DNA of 63,138 nucleotides, counting the filler, from Cercozoa sp. M6MM (Eukaryota; Protista; Endomyxa: Ascetosporea): NCBI GenBank assembly GCA_040357565.1. It is 10 parts of 10 records of this genome, joined end to end, with 100 filler letters (N's around TTAATTAATTAA, not from the genome) between each part and the next. Parts side by side here need not be neighbours in the genome. Positions count along the whole stretch, not along the records: positions 50,109 to 57,646 come from JBDODJ010000620.1; 9 more parts are not named here. One strand, 5' to 3'. Each line of letters opens with the position of its first letter. The first letter of the stretch is position 1. A program made the position numbers and the translations under genes. Shown here in pieces: positions 50,109-57,646 of the stretch. The notes beneath the pieces were generated by a model. It saw only the letters and a list, made by a program, of their open reading frames with translations, ran no database searches and was not told the origin of the DNA.

Positions 50109-50680
<572 letters not shown>

Positions 50681-51160
50681 GACGCGTACGCCTTTTGAGC
50701 GTCAAGTCCACACGCGTGTATTAGACTCGTATCGTATATCTAGGCTACTATTATGCGAACAGATGATAGTGACTGGCCTCGCTTGTACAGCGCAGCACCG
50801 TGAGGACTACTCGATCGGTGCTTTGCCGTTTCGATGCCTCTGCTGATCTCTTCTGAAAACCTTCACGGGATCAACTGCCAGTGTCGGCTGGAATTCAACC
50901 GAGTGACAGGCTTCATACATTCCAAGCAATTCCAAGCACCGTACCTCGGTACTGTCGACCGAATGCAAGTTCAGAGTTGTTCTATACATTTTCGGCTGAT
51001 CCAGCACCGACGGGACTGATCGGTGCCCGCTGGAAAACCGGCACATCAAGTTGAACCTCTTTTTGACGGCGCCGCACTTCGAGTTTTGAGGCTGGCAAAT
51101 GTGCGTCCGGTAAAAGCTAGGCTGATGGCGGACACGCTACGATAGGGTCATAAGACAGTT

Positions 51161-54100
51161 CTAATTCTCCGTCGTGGCCTCCGAGTCGTCGTTTTGCATT
51201 GCGTCTTTCTGGCGTCTGCAATAGCGGCCATGCAATAAAATTTACACACCGGTAAAGAAAAGCGCCAGTGTACTTGGTGAGTCGGTTGGCACGCGGACCA
51301 CGTTTGCGCGCAGCGATATTCTGCTGAGTCAAACGGCGCACCTGCGTCAAAGTGAGAGTGCCAAAGTGAAAATACCAACCCTGCAACCCAAGGAAACCTG
51401 CAACCCAAGGAAAGAGTACCAGCTCGAGGTCGTAGTTTTGACCCTCGGCATGAGCGACGTTGCCCATAACCATGAGTGGCTGCATCGCTGTCAGCAAGTT
51501 CGCAAACAGCGCCGGGTACGACTGTTCCAGAGCGGCCAGGAGTGTCTTCATGCGCGCACGCTCCTGGGGCGAGTCCCAGCAGGCCGGGCTACAAAAAGAA
51601 AAAGCCCCCAGTTGGCATATTTATGCACGAAGCACAATTGTAGTTGGTACCAGTTCTCCGATACGACTGGGAGTCGCGCCATATCGGAAAACTCGCGCAA
51701 CTTCTTCTCGCGGATCAGGATCTAGAGAAAGCATCATTCACCAGAAGCAAACATATGTTAGTATCAAGAAAACTGCACCAGAGGACGAATAACGCGCAGA
51801 TCCTTCTGTTCGACCAAGTAGTTACACTTCATCGTGCGCAGGCGACCGTTGTGGAACGCCGACATCAGGAAGCTCTACACACAGTCACTGCATCCTGGCG
51901 TACGAACTCTGCCTGTCTGTTGGACTACCTCAGCCAGGTCGTCACAGTGCTGACCCATGGCGAGCACGTTGTAACCTAGAAGCGCAAACTGCCAAGGGAG
52001 AGACAAAGAGCACGAAAAAAAACCTTCGCGACGCGCGCAGGTGTACAAAACGCCGCGCTTCATGCGCGCGCAGAACGAGCAGATCTATTCAAACACAAAT
52101 GTCCTCCCTCCTGAACAAACAAACCGATCCTACCGAAGGACGGTCGGTCGACATGCATGACTCGGCTGACTCCATCTGTGTTGCACAACGCACATATACA
52201 AACGTGATACAACGACTCAAGGTACAGTGTTTGAGCATTACAATGTTCTGGCGTTCGTAAAAGTACGGCACTCCCAGTTCGGCGCAGTACTGCACTCAAA
52301 CAGTGAGAAAAAAACACACGGAGTCCCCGAAAGTGGTGTACCTGAATGAGAGGCGACGGGTCGTACTCGGGATGGTCCGGATCGACGGTGCAGGCGCCAA
52401 CTTCGAACTTGACCGGCGATTTCTTCTTCATCTACAAATAAAATTAACTCCAAACCTCAACTGTCAGAAACAAAAAGCACAAACCTCCAGCAGTAGCGAC
52501 AGCATCGAGAGCGAGTCCTTGCCACCAGACAGGGCCACCTGCAGCACAAACCACCGGGTAGAACAGACTTCAGGCTTTCAAGGAGAAAACGCACCAGTAC
52601 ACGGTCACCAGACTTGATCATGTCGTATCGCAGCACCGCCTTGCCCATCGGTCGCAGCAGTTTCTTCGTCAGCAACTTGATCTTCTTTAAGCGCGCTTTT
52701 TCTGACATTGGCGCCTGATTCGTTCAGGAGTATAAACCAACCAACACGACAAAACTGAGACCAAACACAAAAACAAACCTCGGCAGAAGCTGACTGACTG
52801 ACAACGTTCTCCTTGTCATCTTCTGAAGTGTCAATATTCATACACTGCCAAACCCAGTCAGTTCGAAGAAGAGTTCTACGATGAATGAGGTGCGTGCACG
52901 AGCAACTGAGACACTCGTTGGCACCGCCAACATGAACGTGATGGCATGACGCGCAAAGCACACTGCATTATTATTCTTAAGCAGGAGAACAAAAAACATA
53001 CAATGCTCAATTCTGAGAGGTACTCGGGAGCACGTTCACGCAGGTACTTAGCACGCTTGCTGCAACCAAAAGCCAACTGATGAATACACAAATACAACAG
53101 ACAGAATGATACCTGCCCTTGTCACCAGTGGCATCAGTGGCCATTGTGCCACTCTGCGAGTTCACAAGCGACTCGGCTGTCTCGCTTCGTGCCACAGGCA
53201 GCGACAGCTACAAGCACGTATAGTTAAACGCACACAAATCCGTACAAGGGCAAAACGAAGGATACGCCAAGCTTATCGCGCAGGTTCTTCACGATGGTTT
53301 CCTTCTGGCAGGGCACGCACACCTCTGCATGCCAAAGAATAACCAAAGCTATCAAGCACAAGGAAAGCGACTGTACCAGAGTTGCAGTAGCCAGTAGGCC
53401 AGAAAGGCGACACAAGCGATGGAACCGCTGATTGTTTCTGCAGTGCACCGACCGTCTCTACATAATGACAGTCATTTGATTCAACCTCTTTTTATTTATT
53501 TCAAGCTCAAGGTACCAAAAGCACAGACGAACCAGCGCAAAGCTTGGACCTCCTGAGGCCAGCCTTGTGTCGGATTCGGCACCTGCTTGTTCTTCCTGCG
53601 CAGACAGAAGGAGCACGATCAACACAAACAACGTGAGAATTCATACACTGGTACCACTCCTGTTCGAGTCCATTAGCCAACACGACAGCATCTTGCAGAC
53701 AGGTTCGCTTGTCTCCCTCTGCTCGAACACGTTTAATCAAAGAACAGACAAAACAATCACAAAAGAAACGCTACGAGCGAATCGGTTGCGCGACAGGAAG
53801 TGCATTTGACCCTCGCGGAAACGCACAAAGCCCAGCGAACGACGGTCTACAAGGAGGCAGTGTCTCAAACCGCATGAATTTATTTCACGACATACCAGGG
53901 TACTTGCGCAAATGCTCGCGGTGACGGAATTCGCCAGTGTCAGCGTACATCTGGTATTCGGGCTACAACAACAAAATCAAATGTGCTCATTTCGTTCTAT
54001 CGGTGTCTTCAAAAAGAGGCACCAGGAACTTCCAGCCATGCGTGCTTACGAACTCAACCGCATCAAGAATCTACGGAAAGTTGTCACATAAGAATGCACA

Positions 54101-56548
54101 CTTTTCCACAAATCAGGGTACGAAATCAACGTCTCCTTGAGTGGACGCGTAGTGGAAAGACAGACGCGTGAAACCCTGTTTATACATCTGATACGAAAAC
54201 AACAAAACCTGTTCTGTAATAGGTACCGGTCGCACAATATCGTGCTTGGTCAACAAAGCTGATTCGACGCGGTTAGCCCTGAGAAAATCGCTTGTGAGCA
54301 AAGCCCCATTAGATTTGGAGCTATAGTACATGGCCTGATCGATGCCGAGAAGCGACAAAGCATAGGGACCCGCGCACGCACATCCCGCACGCGCCTAATT
54401 TAAAAGTAAATTGAACAATTAATTTTCGGCATTTTTAACTTAAGTTCAAACTCTACCTGCACGCCGAAAAGATCGTTGAGCAGCGCTGCCACGAAGTTGT
54501 GGTGCAGCATCTGGTCCTTGTATCTGGAAAGAACGAGCAGTGTATAACCAACACTCAAACTCAAACTAAACCAAGGCTCTTGTACCTCACGCAGAACGAG
54601 AAAATCGGCAATTGAGCATCGACCGAGTCGCGTCCGAGCAAGAGAATGTTCTCCATGCCATGCAGACGCTGTCTCGCATAGGAAACAAGCTGAGAGTCGA
54701 TGCTCTCAATGTTGTTAACACCGACGCTTTCTTTCACACGGAAGGCGAGGCCTGTTCGCATTAAAAAAGATTCGATGGCCATACGCGAAACCAAAAAGTG
54801 TACCTGCGCGGATGGCTCCCACAATGTTGGGCGTGCCGCCTTCTTCGCGTTCCTCGCTGAGTAATTCACAAATAATTCTCAGAAAGGAACGTGAAAACAC
54901 AGATTAAACCTACAAGTTGCCAAGGAAGCGATGCGAATCGTCAGACACGAAGAATACAGTGCCACCACCCGGCACACATGGCGCCTTGTTGTTGGCCGCT
55001 TGGTGCTAAATCACCCACCATTCTACTGAGACCATAAAAGGCAAATTGGGAAATATAACTTACCTGCAAGAGAGCGCGCTTGATGACAAGAACACCCGGT
55101 GCACCAACACCTGTATTTGTCCAGATTCGATCGCGTTATCTCCAAGCACTTCATGAAAGAACAAATTACCACCAACAAACTTGTGTGGTGACAGAATCAG
55201 CGCGTCCTTGGCCAACTGCAAAAAAAAACAGTTTCAAAAAACAAGAATTGAGAATTCAACAGATCGTATACAGCTGGATCGTTGTTGGGGCACATGTCAA
55301 GCCGAACGTAAGGTGCGCTGGTGGCAGCGTCCCACACGGCCAAAGCTCCGTGTGCTTTCAGTACTCTGCATTTTAAAAAAAATCACCAGAGCTAACTACC
55401 CAAAGGCAGTCTATACCGAGTGACAACGATATCATCGACGAGAGCACCAGTGACATTGCTCGCCATAGAGAAAGCGCCGACAATAACGTCGAACGACTGC
55501 TCCTTTAGCGACGCAAGGGTACTTTCAAGATGCGCAATGTCAATACCTGTTCGCGTTGGCAAGTAACTCGTCCTGACAGAGACAGCAGTTGGGTACCGGT
55601 TGTCGGATGAGACTTGGCAGCGACACAGAAGGCGCCGCTTTCACGCCACGGCAGCAAGTTGCTGTGATCTACACAGTTGAAGATTTTCAGTCTCAAATAA
55701 TCACGAAAAAAAAAGTTACGAGCGTAGGGACAAGTCACAACGGCAGCTTTCTTTCCCTGTTTTGACAGCAATGTGCTTTTCTGATAATCAGGAAAACAGA
55801 AAGAACCCACCTTAAGATCAAGCGCGTGCAGCAGCACTGCGAAAGCACCCGTGGCACCGTTGCCGCAAAACAGAACACTGTCCTTGGTCAGCGAGGCACC
55901 CGTGCCACGTCGCACAATTTGGCGTGCCTGCACAGAGCGTGTACTGTCTGATCCAAACTGAGCTAAACCAAAGCAACTGACCTCGTGACGGAACAGATGC
56001 GTCTGCGCACCCGTGGCACTCGCTGACGAGTGTGTGTTCGCGTACATCGGCAACACTTCGTCCTACAGGGTATCAACAGAGTGCGCCTCTAGTCTGAGAA
56101 GTTGTTTAAAGGAACGCGCTACCTTGATATAATCCTCAATAAAAGAGAGCGCACGACCGCTCGCTGTCCAGTCGGCGTATGTCACCTGCCGAGGACCGAA
56201 CCTGCAACACACCATCCGAAACTGCAACACACAAAAAACAAGTGCAACGTTGTACGGAGAAGCGAAAGTGTTCTTTGCGCCGACGTGACTAAAATAGAAA
56301 AACAAGAAGATAAGCGTGTCGGTGTGGGCATTCATAATTTGGTGCTGCGTGTTGATACCCCTCGCGAATCATACGCAACATCGCCGCGAGCTCCTCGTCG
56401 TTTTTCTCTGCAGATGTTACACCCCTATCGGCGTCCAATGCTCTTAGTTGAATCAGATACCCTCAGCGGGCGCGTTTACTTGGGCATCCTCGAAATAATC
56501 CTCATGCGTGGTGACTGTGAAGTCGCGCACGGCCTCTTGAGCCGTCAT
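51161..56548 (-). CDS. Fusion protein: class-V PLP cysteine desulfurase-like domain + Cys/His linker + TtcA-type tRNA 2-thiocytidine synthetase
   Basis: N-terminal YADWTASGR, YANTH, HHSNLLPW, WDAATSAPY, LSPHKFVGG (PLP Lys), EEGGTPNI, ARAGCACAGPY (catalytic Cys). C-terminal VALSGGKDS (PP-loop), ICSFCARMKRG, LAMGQHCDD, LRVIRPL, ENCPAC. Linker exons join in frame using only GT-AG introns. Confidence 0.85.
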
Positions 56549-57091
56549 AGGACAACTTCAGCGTAAGCTACCACACGTGCCGCCACTCGCAGTCTGTTTA
56601 AGCCTCATTCTGGTGAAACGGTGCGGAGCGCTGGGGCATGCAGAGAAAAAACTCAAATTTCCGCGAAATCCTCTCCAGAGAGGCTTATCAGTGGAGCGCA
56701 GACTCCTGGTCCTCAGTTTGACCGCAATCGTGACTTCAAGCTACTTGTTTAAGCTGTACGCCAGGTTTTCGCTCCCCTTTTTGGGTGACTGCGTTGGCTG
56801 CGTTGGGCCAGCCTGAGTGCAGGAGGGATTTTTCCAGTTAGCCCCCTCGTTGTGCGTTTTTGGTTGCTTTGGTGGTCTCTTGCTGGATTGTTCGTGGGGC
56901 AGTTTCGTGTTTGGTTGTCAGGAGTGCGAATTTAAGATTCTAACTGAGTCCGATGTGTGTGTTGTTGCAGATTTACCTGGGCATGTCGAGCGCGTTCCGA
57001 TAGCAGTAACACGAACAGGGCGCCCGAAAGGATTCTAATCAGCTGAAAGACACTTCATAAACGCACACAAACGCAAGACACTCACAAGATC

Positions 57092-57581
57092 ATGATGATG
57101 AACAAGAACAAACTCGTTGGCTACGGCCTCGTGCTGGCGGCCGCGTTGTTGATGACTAGTACTCTTGCCTTTGCAACGTTTGCTGGTGCTGAAGTGGAAC
57201 ACGTGTTTGTGCAGGCGACACAGTTTTTGTGGAGGCCGCACTGGATGTGCCGCTCGGCTTCTTCTTCTTCTTCGCGTCCACTGCTCCGGTATTTGTGTTG
57301 TCCTTTTGGTTGTTCGGTACTGACTTGGCTGGGCAGTGGTCGCTGCTGCTGCTGCGCAAACAGGTGCGCCGCGACTTTGCGAAACTGCGCGATTTCCGTC
57401 GATACAAACGGTATGTTCTTCAATACGCTATTTTGCCCCGAGTGGTAATGGAAGAAGTTATGCTGGGTTCAGGGCGTTTTTGGGCTCGGGCTGCATAGCA
57501 CTGTCGACGCTCTTCTTTGACTTGGCCATGAAGTACGTGCGCGTGTCTACCGGCGCCGTCATTAACCAGATGGAACCACTG
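57092..57581 (+). CDS. EamA/DMT-superfamily transporter, 5' fragment
   Basis: GYGLVLAAALLMTS..., hydrophobic helices, and LFFDLAMKYVRVSTGAVINQMEPL typical of the first EamA repeat. Confidence 0.75.
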
Positions 57582-57615
57582 GTGAGTCTGGTTGTTTTAC
57601 GGTTTAGTATTTTAG

Positions 57616-57646
<31 letters not shown>

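What the first reader, a model, noticed from the sequence alone, without database searches (positions are those of the whole stretch)
51161..56548. One eukaryotic gene fusing a cysteine desulfurase to a bacterial-type TtcA: a possible self-contained RNA thiolation system
Seen: an intron-rich gene whose exons splice in one frame from a PLP enzyme (SPHK Lys, RAGCACA Cys loop) through a linker (...SQSASAE|APMSEKARLKK...) into a PP-loop enzyme with SGGKDS, CSFC, GQHCDD and CPAC. Known: bacterial TtcA is an Fe-S enzyme that makes 2-thiocytidine at tRNA position 32 and depends on a separate desulfurase (IscS). The eukaryotic relative CTU1/Ncs6 makes s2U34 and reads CTFCGVFRR/GHNADD, whereas this domain reads CSFCARMKRG/GQHCDD/SFLMSAFHNG, closer to TtcA. 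To my knowledge s2C32 is not an established eukaryotic cytosolic tRNA modification. Inference: the fusion channels persulfide (or selenium) straight to the thiolase, giving an uncharacterised modification pathway. The acidic N-terminus shows no obvious organelle-targeting peptide. The same architecture may already exist in databases as uncharacterised proteins.
Basis: partly seen in the sequence, partly recalled or inferred. Interest (0 to 1): 0.85.

Follow-up and report, generated by a model that had tools for sequence, protein, structure and literature searches.

The report
Fused cysteine desulfurase–TtcA tRNA thiolase gene
This is a real, intact eukaryotic gene joining a sulfur-releasing enzyme to a bacterial-type tRNA cytidine thiolase, but the same fusion already sits in the databases for hundreds of eukaryotes and was described in a 2026 preprint, so it is one more member of a known, still uncharacterised family.

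Summary
On the minus strand, 56548 to 51161, about 41 short exons separated by 40 GT-AG introns (40-78 nt) give one open frame of about 1045 aa. It runs from a SufS/CsdA-type PLP domain (SPHK lysine, RAGCACAGP cysteine loop), through a roughly 215-aa linker, into a TtcA-type PP-loop domain (SGGKDS, CSFC, GQHCDD, CPAC).

The model is colinear end to end with uninterrupted 950-1200-aa proteins that carry Aminotran_5 plus ATP_bind_3. These come from alveolates, oomycetes, Rhizaria, cryptophytes, Discoba, Amoebozoa and many animals. The best match is 45% identical in a single alignment.

In fused homologues the C-terminal domain scores about 200-220 bits against NCBIfam TtcA, against 51-69 for TtuA and 37-54 for NcsA. 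Five window exons each hit only the TtcA model, in colinear order.

The architecture is not new. Databases already name such proteins "ttcA", "PP-loop family" or "cysteine desulfurase". A September 2026 preprint reports s2C32 in Aplysia tRNA and describes this fusion, including the CSFC/CPAC arrangement.

Direct sulfur hand-over between the two domains remains an inference, and no RNA data could be obtained for this locus. Verdict: new member of a known kind, moderate-to-low interest.

The parts
51161..56548 (-). Whole coding region: 41-exon model, about 1045 aa, ATG at 56548, stop at 51163-51161
   Evidence: Viterbi model. Intron statistics. A single blastp alignment of model residues 29-992 to residues 47-970 of the 987-aa fused protein P0115, 45% identity.
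53896..56288 (-). SufS/CsdA-type (group II) PLP cysteine-desulfurase-like domain, exons 3-21, about residues 45-520
   Evidence: tblastn matches of L001. 48% identity to P0115 over 504 aligned positions, E 1e-160. Homologues hit Pfam Aminotran_5 and NCBIfam SufS family TIGR01979 and solved SufS structures.
55597..55668 (-). Exon 8, carrying the HHSNLLPW motif (His162/His163; the first His codon is split from exon 7)
   Evidence: The motif aligns with EHHANIVPW of SufS in the homologue. The two His are conserved in 97% and 93% of 102 fused homologues.
55170..55215 (-). Exon 11, carrying SPHK; the PLP-binding Lys272 codon is 55182-55180
   Evidence: SAHK of the homologue aligns with SGHK (the PLP lysine) of SufS-type structures. 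The adjacent His271 is 100% conserved.
54330..54394 (-). Exon 17, carrying the RAGCACAGP loop. Cys424 (54376-54374) is the presumed persulfide-forming catalytic cysteine
   Evidence: GGCACAGP of the homologue aligns with AGHHCAQP of SufS, which puts the second Cys on the SufS catalytic Cys. Cys422 and Cys424 are conserved in 99% of homologues.
52779..53846 (-). Linker, exons 22-29, about 215 aa, weakly conserved
   Evidence: Linker exon GC is 0.554 against linker intron GC 0.396. Pairwise E 2e-8 to the P0115 linker. An LRWF motif is shared with six homologues.
52896..52955 (-). Cys/His-rich motif in the linker (C-x2-C-x-H-x-H ... C-x2-C-x-C), possibly a zinc-binding module
   Evidence: Present in 12 of 213 fused-length homologues and in 0 of 213 shuffled controls. 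Direct tblastn hits on the raw DNA from the Plasmodiophora protein P0163 (E 3.5e-6) and from P0138 (E 6e-5). No Pfam family matched.
51420..52714 (-). TtcA-type PP-loop ATP-pyrophosphatase / [4Fe-4S] thiolase domain, exons 30-39
   Evidence: Five exons each hit only NCBIfam NF007972 (TtcA), at colinear profile positions 11-45, 64-89, 123-141, 160-190 and 221-251. 63% identity to P0115 over 247 aa. It groups with the fused eukaryotic clade in the tree.
52512..52529 (-). PP-loop SGGKDS (ATP binding)
   Evidence: Read directly from the sequence. Invariant in the aligned homologues.
52070..52081 (-). CSFC, corresponding to E. coli TtcA Cys122/Cys125 (Fe-S cluster ligands)
   Evidence: The exon matches TtcA profile positions 123-141. 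Both Cys are 100% conserved. Ligand assignment is from PMC4081106.
51579..51652 (-). CPAC, with its first Cys codon split by intron 38 (51651|51588). Corresponds to E. coli Cys219/Cys222; Cys222 is the third cluster ligand
   Evidence: Model. Both Cys are 100% conserved. The motif NCPAC[FW] is shared by all hits of the last-exon search.
51161..51341 (-). Exons 40-41: unconserved basic/acidic C-terminal tail and stop codon (weakly supported part of the model)
   Evidence: Column identity with homologues is below 0.06.

Best explanation
What it is. A single intact nuclear gene on the minus strand, with about 41 exons, encodes a bifunctional protein of about 1045 aa. It is an orthologue of a fusion family found across eukaryotes.

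Shown here.
- The N-terminal domain is a group-II (SufS/CsdA-like) PLP enzyme. It keeps the PLP lysine, the His-His pair and the catalytic-loop cysteine.
- The C-terminal domain is a TtcA-type PP-loop enzyme. It keeps the ATP-binding loop and the three cysteines that hold the [4Fe-4S] cluster in E. coli TtcA.
- The two domains are joined by a spliced linker of about 215 aa.

Inferred mechanism.
- The desulfurase domain takes sulfur from free L-cysteine as a persulfide on Cys424.
- The TtcA domain adenylates C2 of cytidine 32 in some cytosolic tRNAs.
- The sulfur is passed to the open iron site of the cluster, either within one chain or across a dimer, and replaces the adenylate to give 2-thiocytidine.
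- The Fe-S cluster and the reducing equivalents must still come from the cell, so the system is not self-contained.

My confidence in the single-gene architecture is about 0.95. My confidence in the s2C32 function with built-in sulfur supply is about 0.55-0.6.
For: Architecture.
- Colinear tblastn matches of an uninterrupted environmental ORF on the raw DNA.
- A 41-exon open model with uniform GT-AG introns and a strong exon/intron GC contrast, including in the linker.
- A single blastp alignment spanning both domains and the linker to P0115 and P0119.
- Uninterrupted ORFs of 1133-1211 aa with Aminotran_5 plus ATP_bind_3 in environmental contigs.
- Nearly all of the top 120 hits of one search and all 120 of the other carry both Pfam domains. 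Named sources include Symbiodinium, Perkinsus, Cryptosporidium, Phytophthora, Plasmodiophora, Guillardia, Acrasis, Dictyostelium, Trichoplax, Branchiostoma, echinoderms and ticks.

Identity of the domains.
- TtcA model 198-221 bits, against 51-69 for TtuA and 37-54 for NcsA.
- The window's exons hit only the TtcA model.
- The alignment to solved SufS structures places the Lys, the His-His pair and the Cys on the catalytic residues.
- These residues are 93-100% conserved in 102 fused homologues.

Function.
- E. coli TtcA makes s2C32 in vitro with cysteine plus a desulfurase as the sulfur source. A persulfide-to-cluster transfer has been proposed for it (PMC4081106).
- s2C32 was found in Aplysia tRNA-Lys(UUU), in an animal whose only TtcA homologue is this fusion (bioRxiv 10.64898/2026.09.27.754811).
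- One homologue, P0103, carries an added thioredoxin domain. This fits the reductant requirement of TtcA.
Against:
- The joined protein could not be scored against curated models. Single exons give weak E values, 1e-4 to 0.1.
- Fused homologues score below the NCBIfam TtcA equivalog cut-off (about 200-220 against 272). They score far below the SufS cut-off (87-105 against 475). Neither activity can therefore be assumed from family membership.
- No member of the fusion family has been assayed. The Aplysia link between the gene and s2C is only a correlation.
- The docking prediction of the two domains gave no verdict.
Confidence: 0.7

Rival explanations
1. The fused protein is real, but its product is not s2C32 in tRNA. 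The TtcA-like domain may thiolate another position, another RNA or another substrate. Alternatively, the PLP domain may serve to build or repair the domain's own Fe-S cluster rather than supply the sulfur that ends up in RNA.
For: - The domain scores below the TtcA equivalog cut-off: 198-221 against 272 bits.
- It forms a clade apart from the stand-alone bacterial-type proteins, with SH-aLRT support 95.
- Extra modules occur in the family. These are a dsRNA-type C2H2 finger in L007, HMG box and thioredoxin domains in some homologues, and a Cys/His motif in this gene.
- No biochemical assay exists for any member.
Against: - TtcA is by far the best-scoring family, and the cluster-ligand cysteines and PP-loop are invariant.
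- Stand-alone bacterial proteins with the same NCPAC motif score in the same range on the TtcA model, 214-223 bits.
- s2C32 is present in Aplysia, which carries the fusion.
Confidence: 0.2
2. There are two adjacent genes, a desulfurase gene and a ttcA gene, transcribed separately, and the linker 'exons' are an artefact of forcing one frame.
For: - There are no RNA data for this locus.
- The linker is weakly conserved, with column identity 0.01-0.18.
- A Met codon lies at the start of the TtcA part, at 52708.
Against: - Nine consecutive linker introns have the same GT-AG form, the same size (49-64 nt) and the same low GC as the others. Linker exons have exon-like GC.
- Linker motifs of homologues hit the raw DNA, with E down to 3.5e-6.
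- Homologues from most eukaryotic supergroups are single uninterrupted ORFs.
- There is no space for a terminator and a promoter between the two parts.
Confidence: 0.04
3. The PLP domain acts as a selenocysteine lyase, and the protein makes a seleno-nucleoside.
For: Group-II desulfurases often also cleave selenocysteine. There are weak hits to the selenocysteine lyase model SclA in two homologues.
Against: The SclA scores, 21-29 bits, are far below the SufS-family scores. No selenium-handling partner or motif was seen. s2C, not a seleno-nucleoside, was found in Aplysia.
Confidence: 0.03
4. It is a decaying pseudogene or an assembly artefact.
For: None specific. The organism is unknown and the piece is short.
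Against: The frame stays open across 41 exons. All catalytic residues are intact. Splice sites are uniform.
Confidence: 0.02

Closest known systems
Eukaryotic CsdA/'IscS'-TtcA fusion proteins (for example Aplysia californica LOC101861551, 1177 aa; database entries named 'ttcA', 'PP-loop family', 'cysteine desulfurase' or 'C2H2-type domain-containing protein')
   Same: - The domain order is the same: a class-V PLP domain, a poorly conserved linker, then a TtcA-like PP-loop domain.
- The PLP lysine, the C-x-C loop, SGGKDS, CSFC and CPAC are all present.
- The model is colinear over its full length, at 43-50% identity.
   Different: - No close relative was found; the best is about 45-50% identical.
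- The linker is shorter than in Aplysia (about 215 against 405 aa).
- It lacks the C2H2 finger inserted in the PLP domain of some homologues (seen in L007; many alveolate and ciliate entries are named C2H2-type). Only a 54-nt intron lies where a homologue (P0124) carries its roughly 95-aa insert.
- It carries a Cys/His-rich linker motif found in only 12 of 213 relatives.
Bacterial TtcA (tRNA 2-thiocytidine(32) synthetase, NCBIfam NF007972; E. coli enzyme characterised in PMC4081106)
   Same: It has the PP-loop, a central CxxC, a later CxxC containing the third cluster ligand, and the GxHxDD motif. TtcA is the best-scoring family for the homologues and the only family hit by the window's exons.
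   Different: - It is fused to its own desulfurase, whereas bacterial TtcA is about 260-310 aa and uses the separate IscS.
- Homologue scores are below the equivalog cut-off.
- The stand-alone bacterial-type proteins with the NCPAC motif form a separate clade.
SufS/CsdA group-II cysteine desulfurases
   Same: The fold family is the same, and the PLP lysine, the His-His pair and the catalytic cysteine all align.
   Different: - It is very divergent, at 87-105 bits against a cut-off of 475.
- The loop reads GCACAGP instead of GHHCAxP.
- It has a C-terminal extension of about 80 aa that is conserved within the fusion family.
- No SufE/SufU-type acceptor is involved.
CTU1/Ncs6/NcsA and TtuA (s2U34 and s2T54 thiolases)
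   Same: They belong to the same PP-loop, [4Fe-4S]-dependent superfamily. TtuA is the best solved structure for the C-terminal domain.
   Different: Model scores are much lower, 37-69 bits against about 200-220 for TtcA. No ubiquitin-like sulfur carrier is implied.

Membership tests
Eukaryotic desulfurase-TtcA fusion family | Aminotran_5-type and PP-loop (ATP_bind_3) domains in one polypeptide, in that order | tested here: met
   The model is colinear with single-ORF homologues that carry both Pfam domains. The joined window protein itself was not sent to Pfam. Only its exons were, by reference.
Eukaryotic desulfurase-TtcA fusion family | One continuous mRNA across the linker | not testable with these tools
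Indirect support comes from the splice-site and GC pattern and from linker homology.
Eukaryotic desulfurase-TtcA fusion family | The C...CSFC...CPAC cysteine arrangement described for molluscs | tested here: met
   Cys859, Cys862, Cys949 and Cys952 are 100% conserved, and Cys873 86%. The description is from the preprint.
TtcA (tRNA 2-thiocytidine(32) synthetase) | PP-loop SGGxDS | tested here: met
   SGGKDS at 52529-52512.
TtcA (tRNA 2-thiocytidine(32) synthetase) | Three cluster-ligand cysteines, equivalent to E. coli Cys122, Cys125 and Cys222 | tested here: met
   The CSFC exon matches profile positions 123-141. The exon that begins with the last three residues of CPAC matches profile 221-251 over the residues just after the motif. 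Ligand assignment is from PMC4081106.
TtcA (tRNA 2-thiocytidine(32) synthetase) | Score at or above the NCBIfam NF007972 equivalog cut-off (272 bits) | tested here: not met
   Fused homologues score 198-221 bits. Stand-alone bacterial-type relatives score 214-223 bits. The five window exons sum to about 86 bits. The joined protein was not scored.
TtcA (tRNA 2-thiocytidine(32) synthetase) | Formation of s2C at tRNA position 32 | not testable with these tools
   The only support is correlative, from the literature on Aplysia.
Group-II (SufS/CsdA) cysteine desulfurase | PLP lysine, the preceding His-His pair, and a catalytic cysteine in the R-x-G-x-x-C-A-x-P loop | tested here: met
   Alignment of the homologue P0115 to solved SufS-type structures. 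The same residues are present in the window's model and 93-100% conserved.
Group-II (SufS/CsdA) cysteine desulfurase | Score at or above the SufS family cut-off (TIGR01979, 475 bits) | tested here: not met
   Homologues score 87-105 bits. One window exon scores 13.7 bits.
CTU1/Ncs6/NcsA or TtuA | Best match to the NcsA or TtuA models | tested here: not met
   NcsA scores 37-54 bits and TtuA 51-69 bits, against about 200-220 for TtcA. No window exon hit either model.

The most novel reading that the evidence does not exclude
This family may be the eukaryotic s2C32 synthase, and at the same time a second, cytosolic route for mobilising sulfur from cysteine that does not depend on the mitochondrial NFS1 desulfurase. 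In this reading, a SufS-like domain loads sulfur straight onto the open iron site of the fused TtcA cluster. The family is present in most eukaryotic supergroups. Its lack of study would be explained if the usual model organisms lack it, which I did not test. In the subgroup that includes this gene, a Cys/His-rich module in the linker would add a metal site of unknown role.
Probability: 0.4. Interest if true: 0.6.

Novelty: new member of a known kind. Interest (0 to 1): 0.33.

Why it matters
The family is widespread across eukaryotes and has never been studied biochemically. If it works as inferred, it would explain the s2C32 just reported in an animal tRNA. It would also show a tRNA thiolase that carries its own sulfur-mobilising enzyme.

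This locus adds little to that. The fusion is already in public databases for hundreds of species and is described in a 2026 preprint.

- The catalytic cysteine that the preprint could not find by comparison with IscS is evident when the domain is aligned to SufS-type enzymes: it is the second Cys of the GCACAGP loop.
- The fusion extends well beyond animals, to alveolates, oomycetes, Rhizaria, cryptophytes, Discoba and Amoebozoa.
- A subgroup carries a conserved Cys/His motif in the supposedly unconserved linker.

Tried and rejected

Limits on the spliced model.
After that only coordinates and references were used.
- Exons were searched one by one, by reference.

Searches that gave little or nothing.
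- Exon-level Pfam gave almost nothing: Aminotran_5 at E 0.021 for one exon, and no family for the linker exons.
- The exon-level search of solved structures gave only chance hits.
- The ESM Atlas look-up of the Cys-loop exon was uninformative.
- The representative search with the last exon returned only short eukaryotic fragments, plus three repeat proteins that matched a read-through intron. The fragments did lead on to the full-length homologues.
- Cluster look-ups gave no organism names.
- Rfam found nothing in the piece.
- Further literature searches found no other paper on the fusion.

Docking.
- Complex prediction on the PLP and TtcA domains of homologue P0115 gave no verdict, with score 0.09 against a mark of 0.34. 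This is evidence neither for nor against binding.

Models rejected.
- My first ab initio models left several introns unspliced and were replaced by the homology-guided model.

Not resolved.
- The source organism could not be identified; the best relatives are only 45-50% identical.
- No tree with TtuA, NcsA or CTU1 outgroups was built, because no such sequences were available by reference. The assignment to TtcA rests on model scores.

Full report
**Observation.** The piece (50109-57646) is about 50% GC and ends in an (AC)n and an (AT)n microsatellite.

Translating the three minus frames shows a chain of short open segments.

A first ab initio Viterbi model left several introns unspliced. The final model combined codon usage, self-trained splice-site matrices and per-codon tblastn homology. 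It gives 41 exons and 1045 aa, from the ATG at 56548 to the stop at 51163-51161.

- All 40 introns are GT-AG, with donors mostly GTA and acceptors YAG. They are 40-78 nt long, median 56.
- Exon GC is 0.566 against intron GC 0.407.
- 31 of 40 introns would break the frame or add a stop if retained.

**Is it one gene?** RNA evidence could not be obtained. The question was therefore answered by comparison with other sequences.

A search with the last exon found short eukaryotic fragments sharing the NCPAC[FW] motif. Scanning metagenome contigs with their alignment returned 80 loci. Many of these carry uninterrupted ORFs of 1000-1225 aa. Four were tested and each has Pfam Aminotran_5 followed by ATP_bind_3.

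The L001 ORF, compared with the raw window DNA by tblastn, gives colinear minus-strand matches for both domains. In local scripts, the joined model aligns in a single blastp alignment, residues 29-992, to residues 47-970 of the 987-aa fused protein P0115, at 45% identity. It aligns similarly to P0119.

By region, identity to P0115 is as follows:

| Region | Identity to P0115 | E value |
|---|---|---|
| PLP domain | 48% | 1e-160 |
| Linker | 26% | 2e-8 |
| TtcA domain | 63% | 3e-107 |

The linker is not featureless. It shares an LRWF motif and a Cys/His-rich motif with a subgroup of homologues. Homologue linkers hit the raw DNA at 52964-52875, with E 3.5e-6 for the Plasmodiophora protein. Linker exons and introns show the same GC contrast as the rest of the gene. 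I put the two-gene alternative at about 4%.

Exons were searched singly, by reference, and the joined sequence was used only in local alignments.

**What the domains are.** Fused homologues were scored against curated NCBIfam models:

| Model | Score in fused homologues (bits) | Model cut-off (bits) |
|---|---|---|
| TtcA (NF007972) | 198-221 | 272 |
| TtuA | 51-69 | 450 |
| NcsA | 37-54 | 500 |
| SufS family (TIGR01979), best model for the N-terminal domain | 87-105 | 475 |

Five TtcA-domain exons of the window, searched separately, each hit only NF007972. They match colinear profile positions 11-45, 64-89, 123-141, 160-190 and 221-251.

Against solved structures, P0115 aligns best to SufS-type desulfurases. 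Its SAHK sits on the SufS PLP-lysine motif, EHHSNLLPW on EHHANIVPW, and GGCACAGP on AGHHCAQP. The second cysteine of the loop, Cys424 in the window's model, is therefore the likely persulfide-forming residue.

Across 102 fused homologues the following residues are 93-100% conserved:

- His162 and His163
- His271, the His of the SPHK motif; the PLP lysine Lys272 follows it, and its own conservation was not measured
- Cys422 and Cys424
- Cys859 and Cys862 (CSFC)
- Cys949 and Cys952 (CPAC)

In E. coli TtcA the cluster ligands are Cys122, Cys125 and Cys222. The enzyme works in vitro with cysteine plus a desulfurase, ATP and a reductant, and a persulfide-to-cluster sulfur transfer has been proposed for it (PMC4081106).

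**Distribution.** One search found 682 proteins of 630-2000 aa with E at or below 1e-5, and nearly all of the top 120 carry both Pfam domains.

Named sources include:

- alveolates: dinoflagellates (some already named 'ttcA'), Perkinsus, Amoebophrya, chromerids, Cryptosporidium, Besnoitia, gregarines, and the ciliates Blepharisma and Stentor
- Diplonema, Percolomonas and Acrasis
- many oomycetes
- Plasmodiophora, Guillardia and Dictyostelium purpureum
- Trichoplax, sponges, corals, echinoderms, hemichordates and amphioxus
- ticks, spiders, a mayfly, an annelid and a chiton

Stand-alone proteins of 256-276 aa with the same NCPAC motif sit on long contigs beside bacterial-type genes such as DsbD and a histidine kinase. 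They score 214-223 bits on the TtcA model. In a tree of the TtcA domain they separate from the fused proteins, with SH-aLRT support 95. The window's domain falls among the fused ones, next to P0115, P0119 and P0103. No relative closer than about 45-50% identity was found, so the source organism stays unknown.

**Literature.** A bioRxiv preprint of 28 September 2026 (10.64898/2026.09.27.754811) reports s2C32 in Aplysia tRNA-Lys(UUU). It describes a 1177-aa 'IscS-TtcA' protein with a CsdA domain, a poorly conserved linker of about 405 aa, and a TtcA-like domain with a C-CSFC-CPAC arrangement. RNA-seq coverage there is consistent with one transcript, and relatives are noted in molluscs, birds and insects. 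No other paper on the fusion was found.

The preprint says the catalytic cysteine was not identified by comparison with IscS. The SufS alignment here identifies it.

**Mechanism.** The two catalytic domains and their intact active-site residues are shown. The rest is inferred.

- The PLP domain makes a persulfide from L-cysteine.
- The TtcA domain adenylates C32.
- The sulfur is passed to the cluster's free iron site, within one chain or across a dimer.
- Sulfur then displaces AMP.

The cluster and the reductant come from the cell, so 'self-contained' overstates the case. One homologue with an added thioredoxin domain (P0103) fits the need for a reductant. A docking prediction of the two domains gave no verdict and counts neither way.

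**Verdict.** The gene is another member of a fusion family that is already catalogued and was recently described, though it has not been studied biochemically.

Noticed in passing
window 52896-52955 (-): The linker holds a Cys/His-rich motif (C-x2-C-x-H-x-H, a gap, then C-x2-C-x-C) about 50 residues before the TtcA domain. It is shared by only 12 of 213 fused homologues, among them Plasmodiophora brassicae and Dictyostelium purpureum, and by none of 213 shuffled controls. It may be a zinc site. No Pfam family matched.
   Followed up: partly
L007:167-3565 and database names: The L007 protein carries a dsRNA-type C2H2 zinc finger (zf-C2H2_jaz) inserted in the PLP domain, and many alveolate and ciliate database entries are named 'C2H2-type domain-containing'. 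Other homologues carry a thioredoxin domain (P0103) or an HMG box (P0226, P0259). The window's gene has no C2H2 insert: only a 54-nt intron lies where homologue P0124 carries its roughly 95-aa insert.
   Followed up: partly
L062:9839-10606, L067:9806-10597, L070:9788-10615: These loci carry stand-alone TtcA-like proteins of 256-276 aa with the same NCPAC motif, about 50% identical to the eukaryotic domain. They sit on long contigs next to bacterial-type genes (DsbD, a hybrid histidine kinase). They are candidates for the prokaryotic relatives of the fused domain.
   Followed up: partly
window 57092-57646 (+): A divergently transcribed neighbouring gene starts about 540 nt upstream of the ATG at 56548. 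It is hydrophobic and has a weak EamA-like transporter match (E 0.012). It is cut off by the end of the piece.
   Followed up: partly
window 50230-50679 (-): Another spliced minus-strand gene appears to start at an ATG near 50679, about 480 nt downstream of this gene's stop, and runs into the (AC)n repeat. If so, the genome is compact and very rich in introns. This was read by eye only.
   Followed up: no
window 51380-51413: A perfect 17-nt tandem duplication (two copies) lies inside predicted intron 39. Reading through this intron produced spurious matches to large repeat proteins in the representative search (P0001, P0014, P0027).
   Followed up: partly
window 50109-50221 and 57616-57646: An (AC)56 microsatellite and an (AT)15 microsatellite lie at the two ends of the piece.
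   Followed up: yes
P0002, P0007, P0011: Several fragmentary homologues end in a hydrophobic stretch that looks like a C-terminal membrane anchor. The window's predicted tail (51341-51161) is basic and acidic, not hydrophobic, but that part of the model is weak.
   Followed up: no
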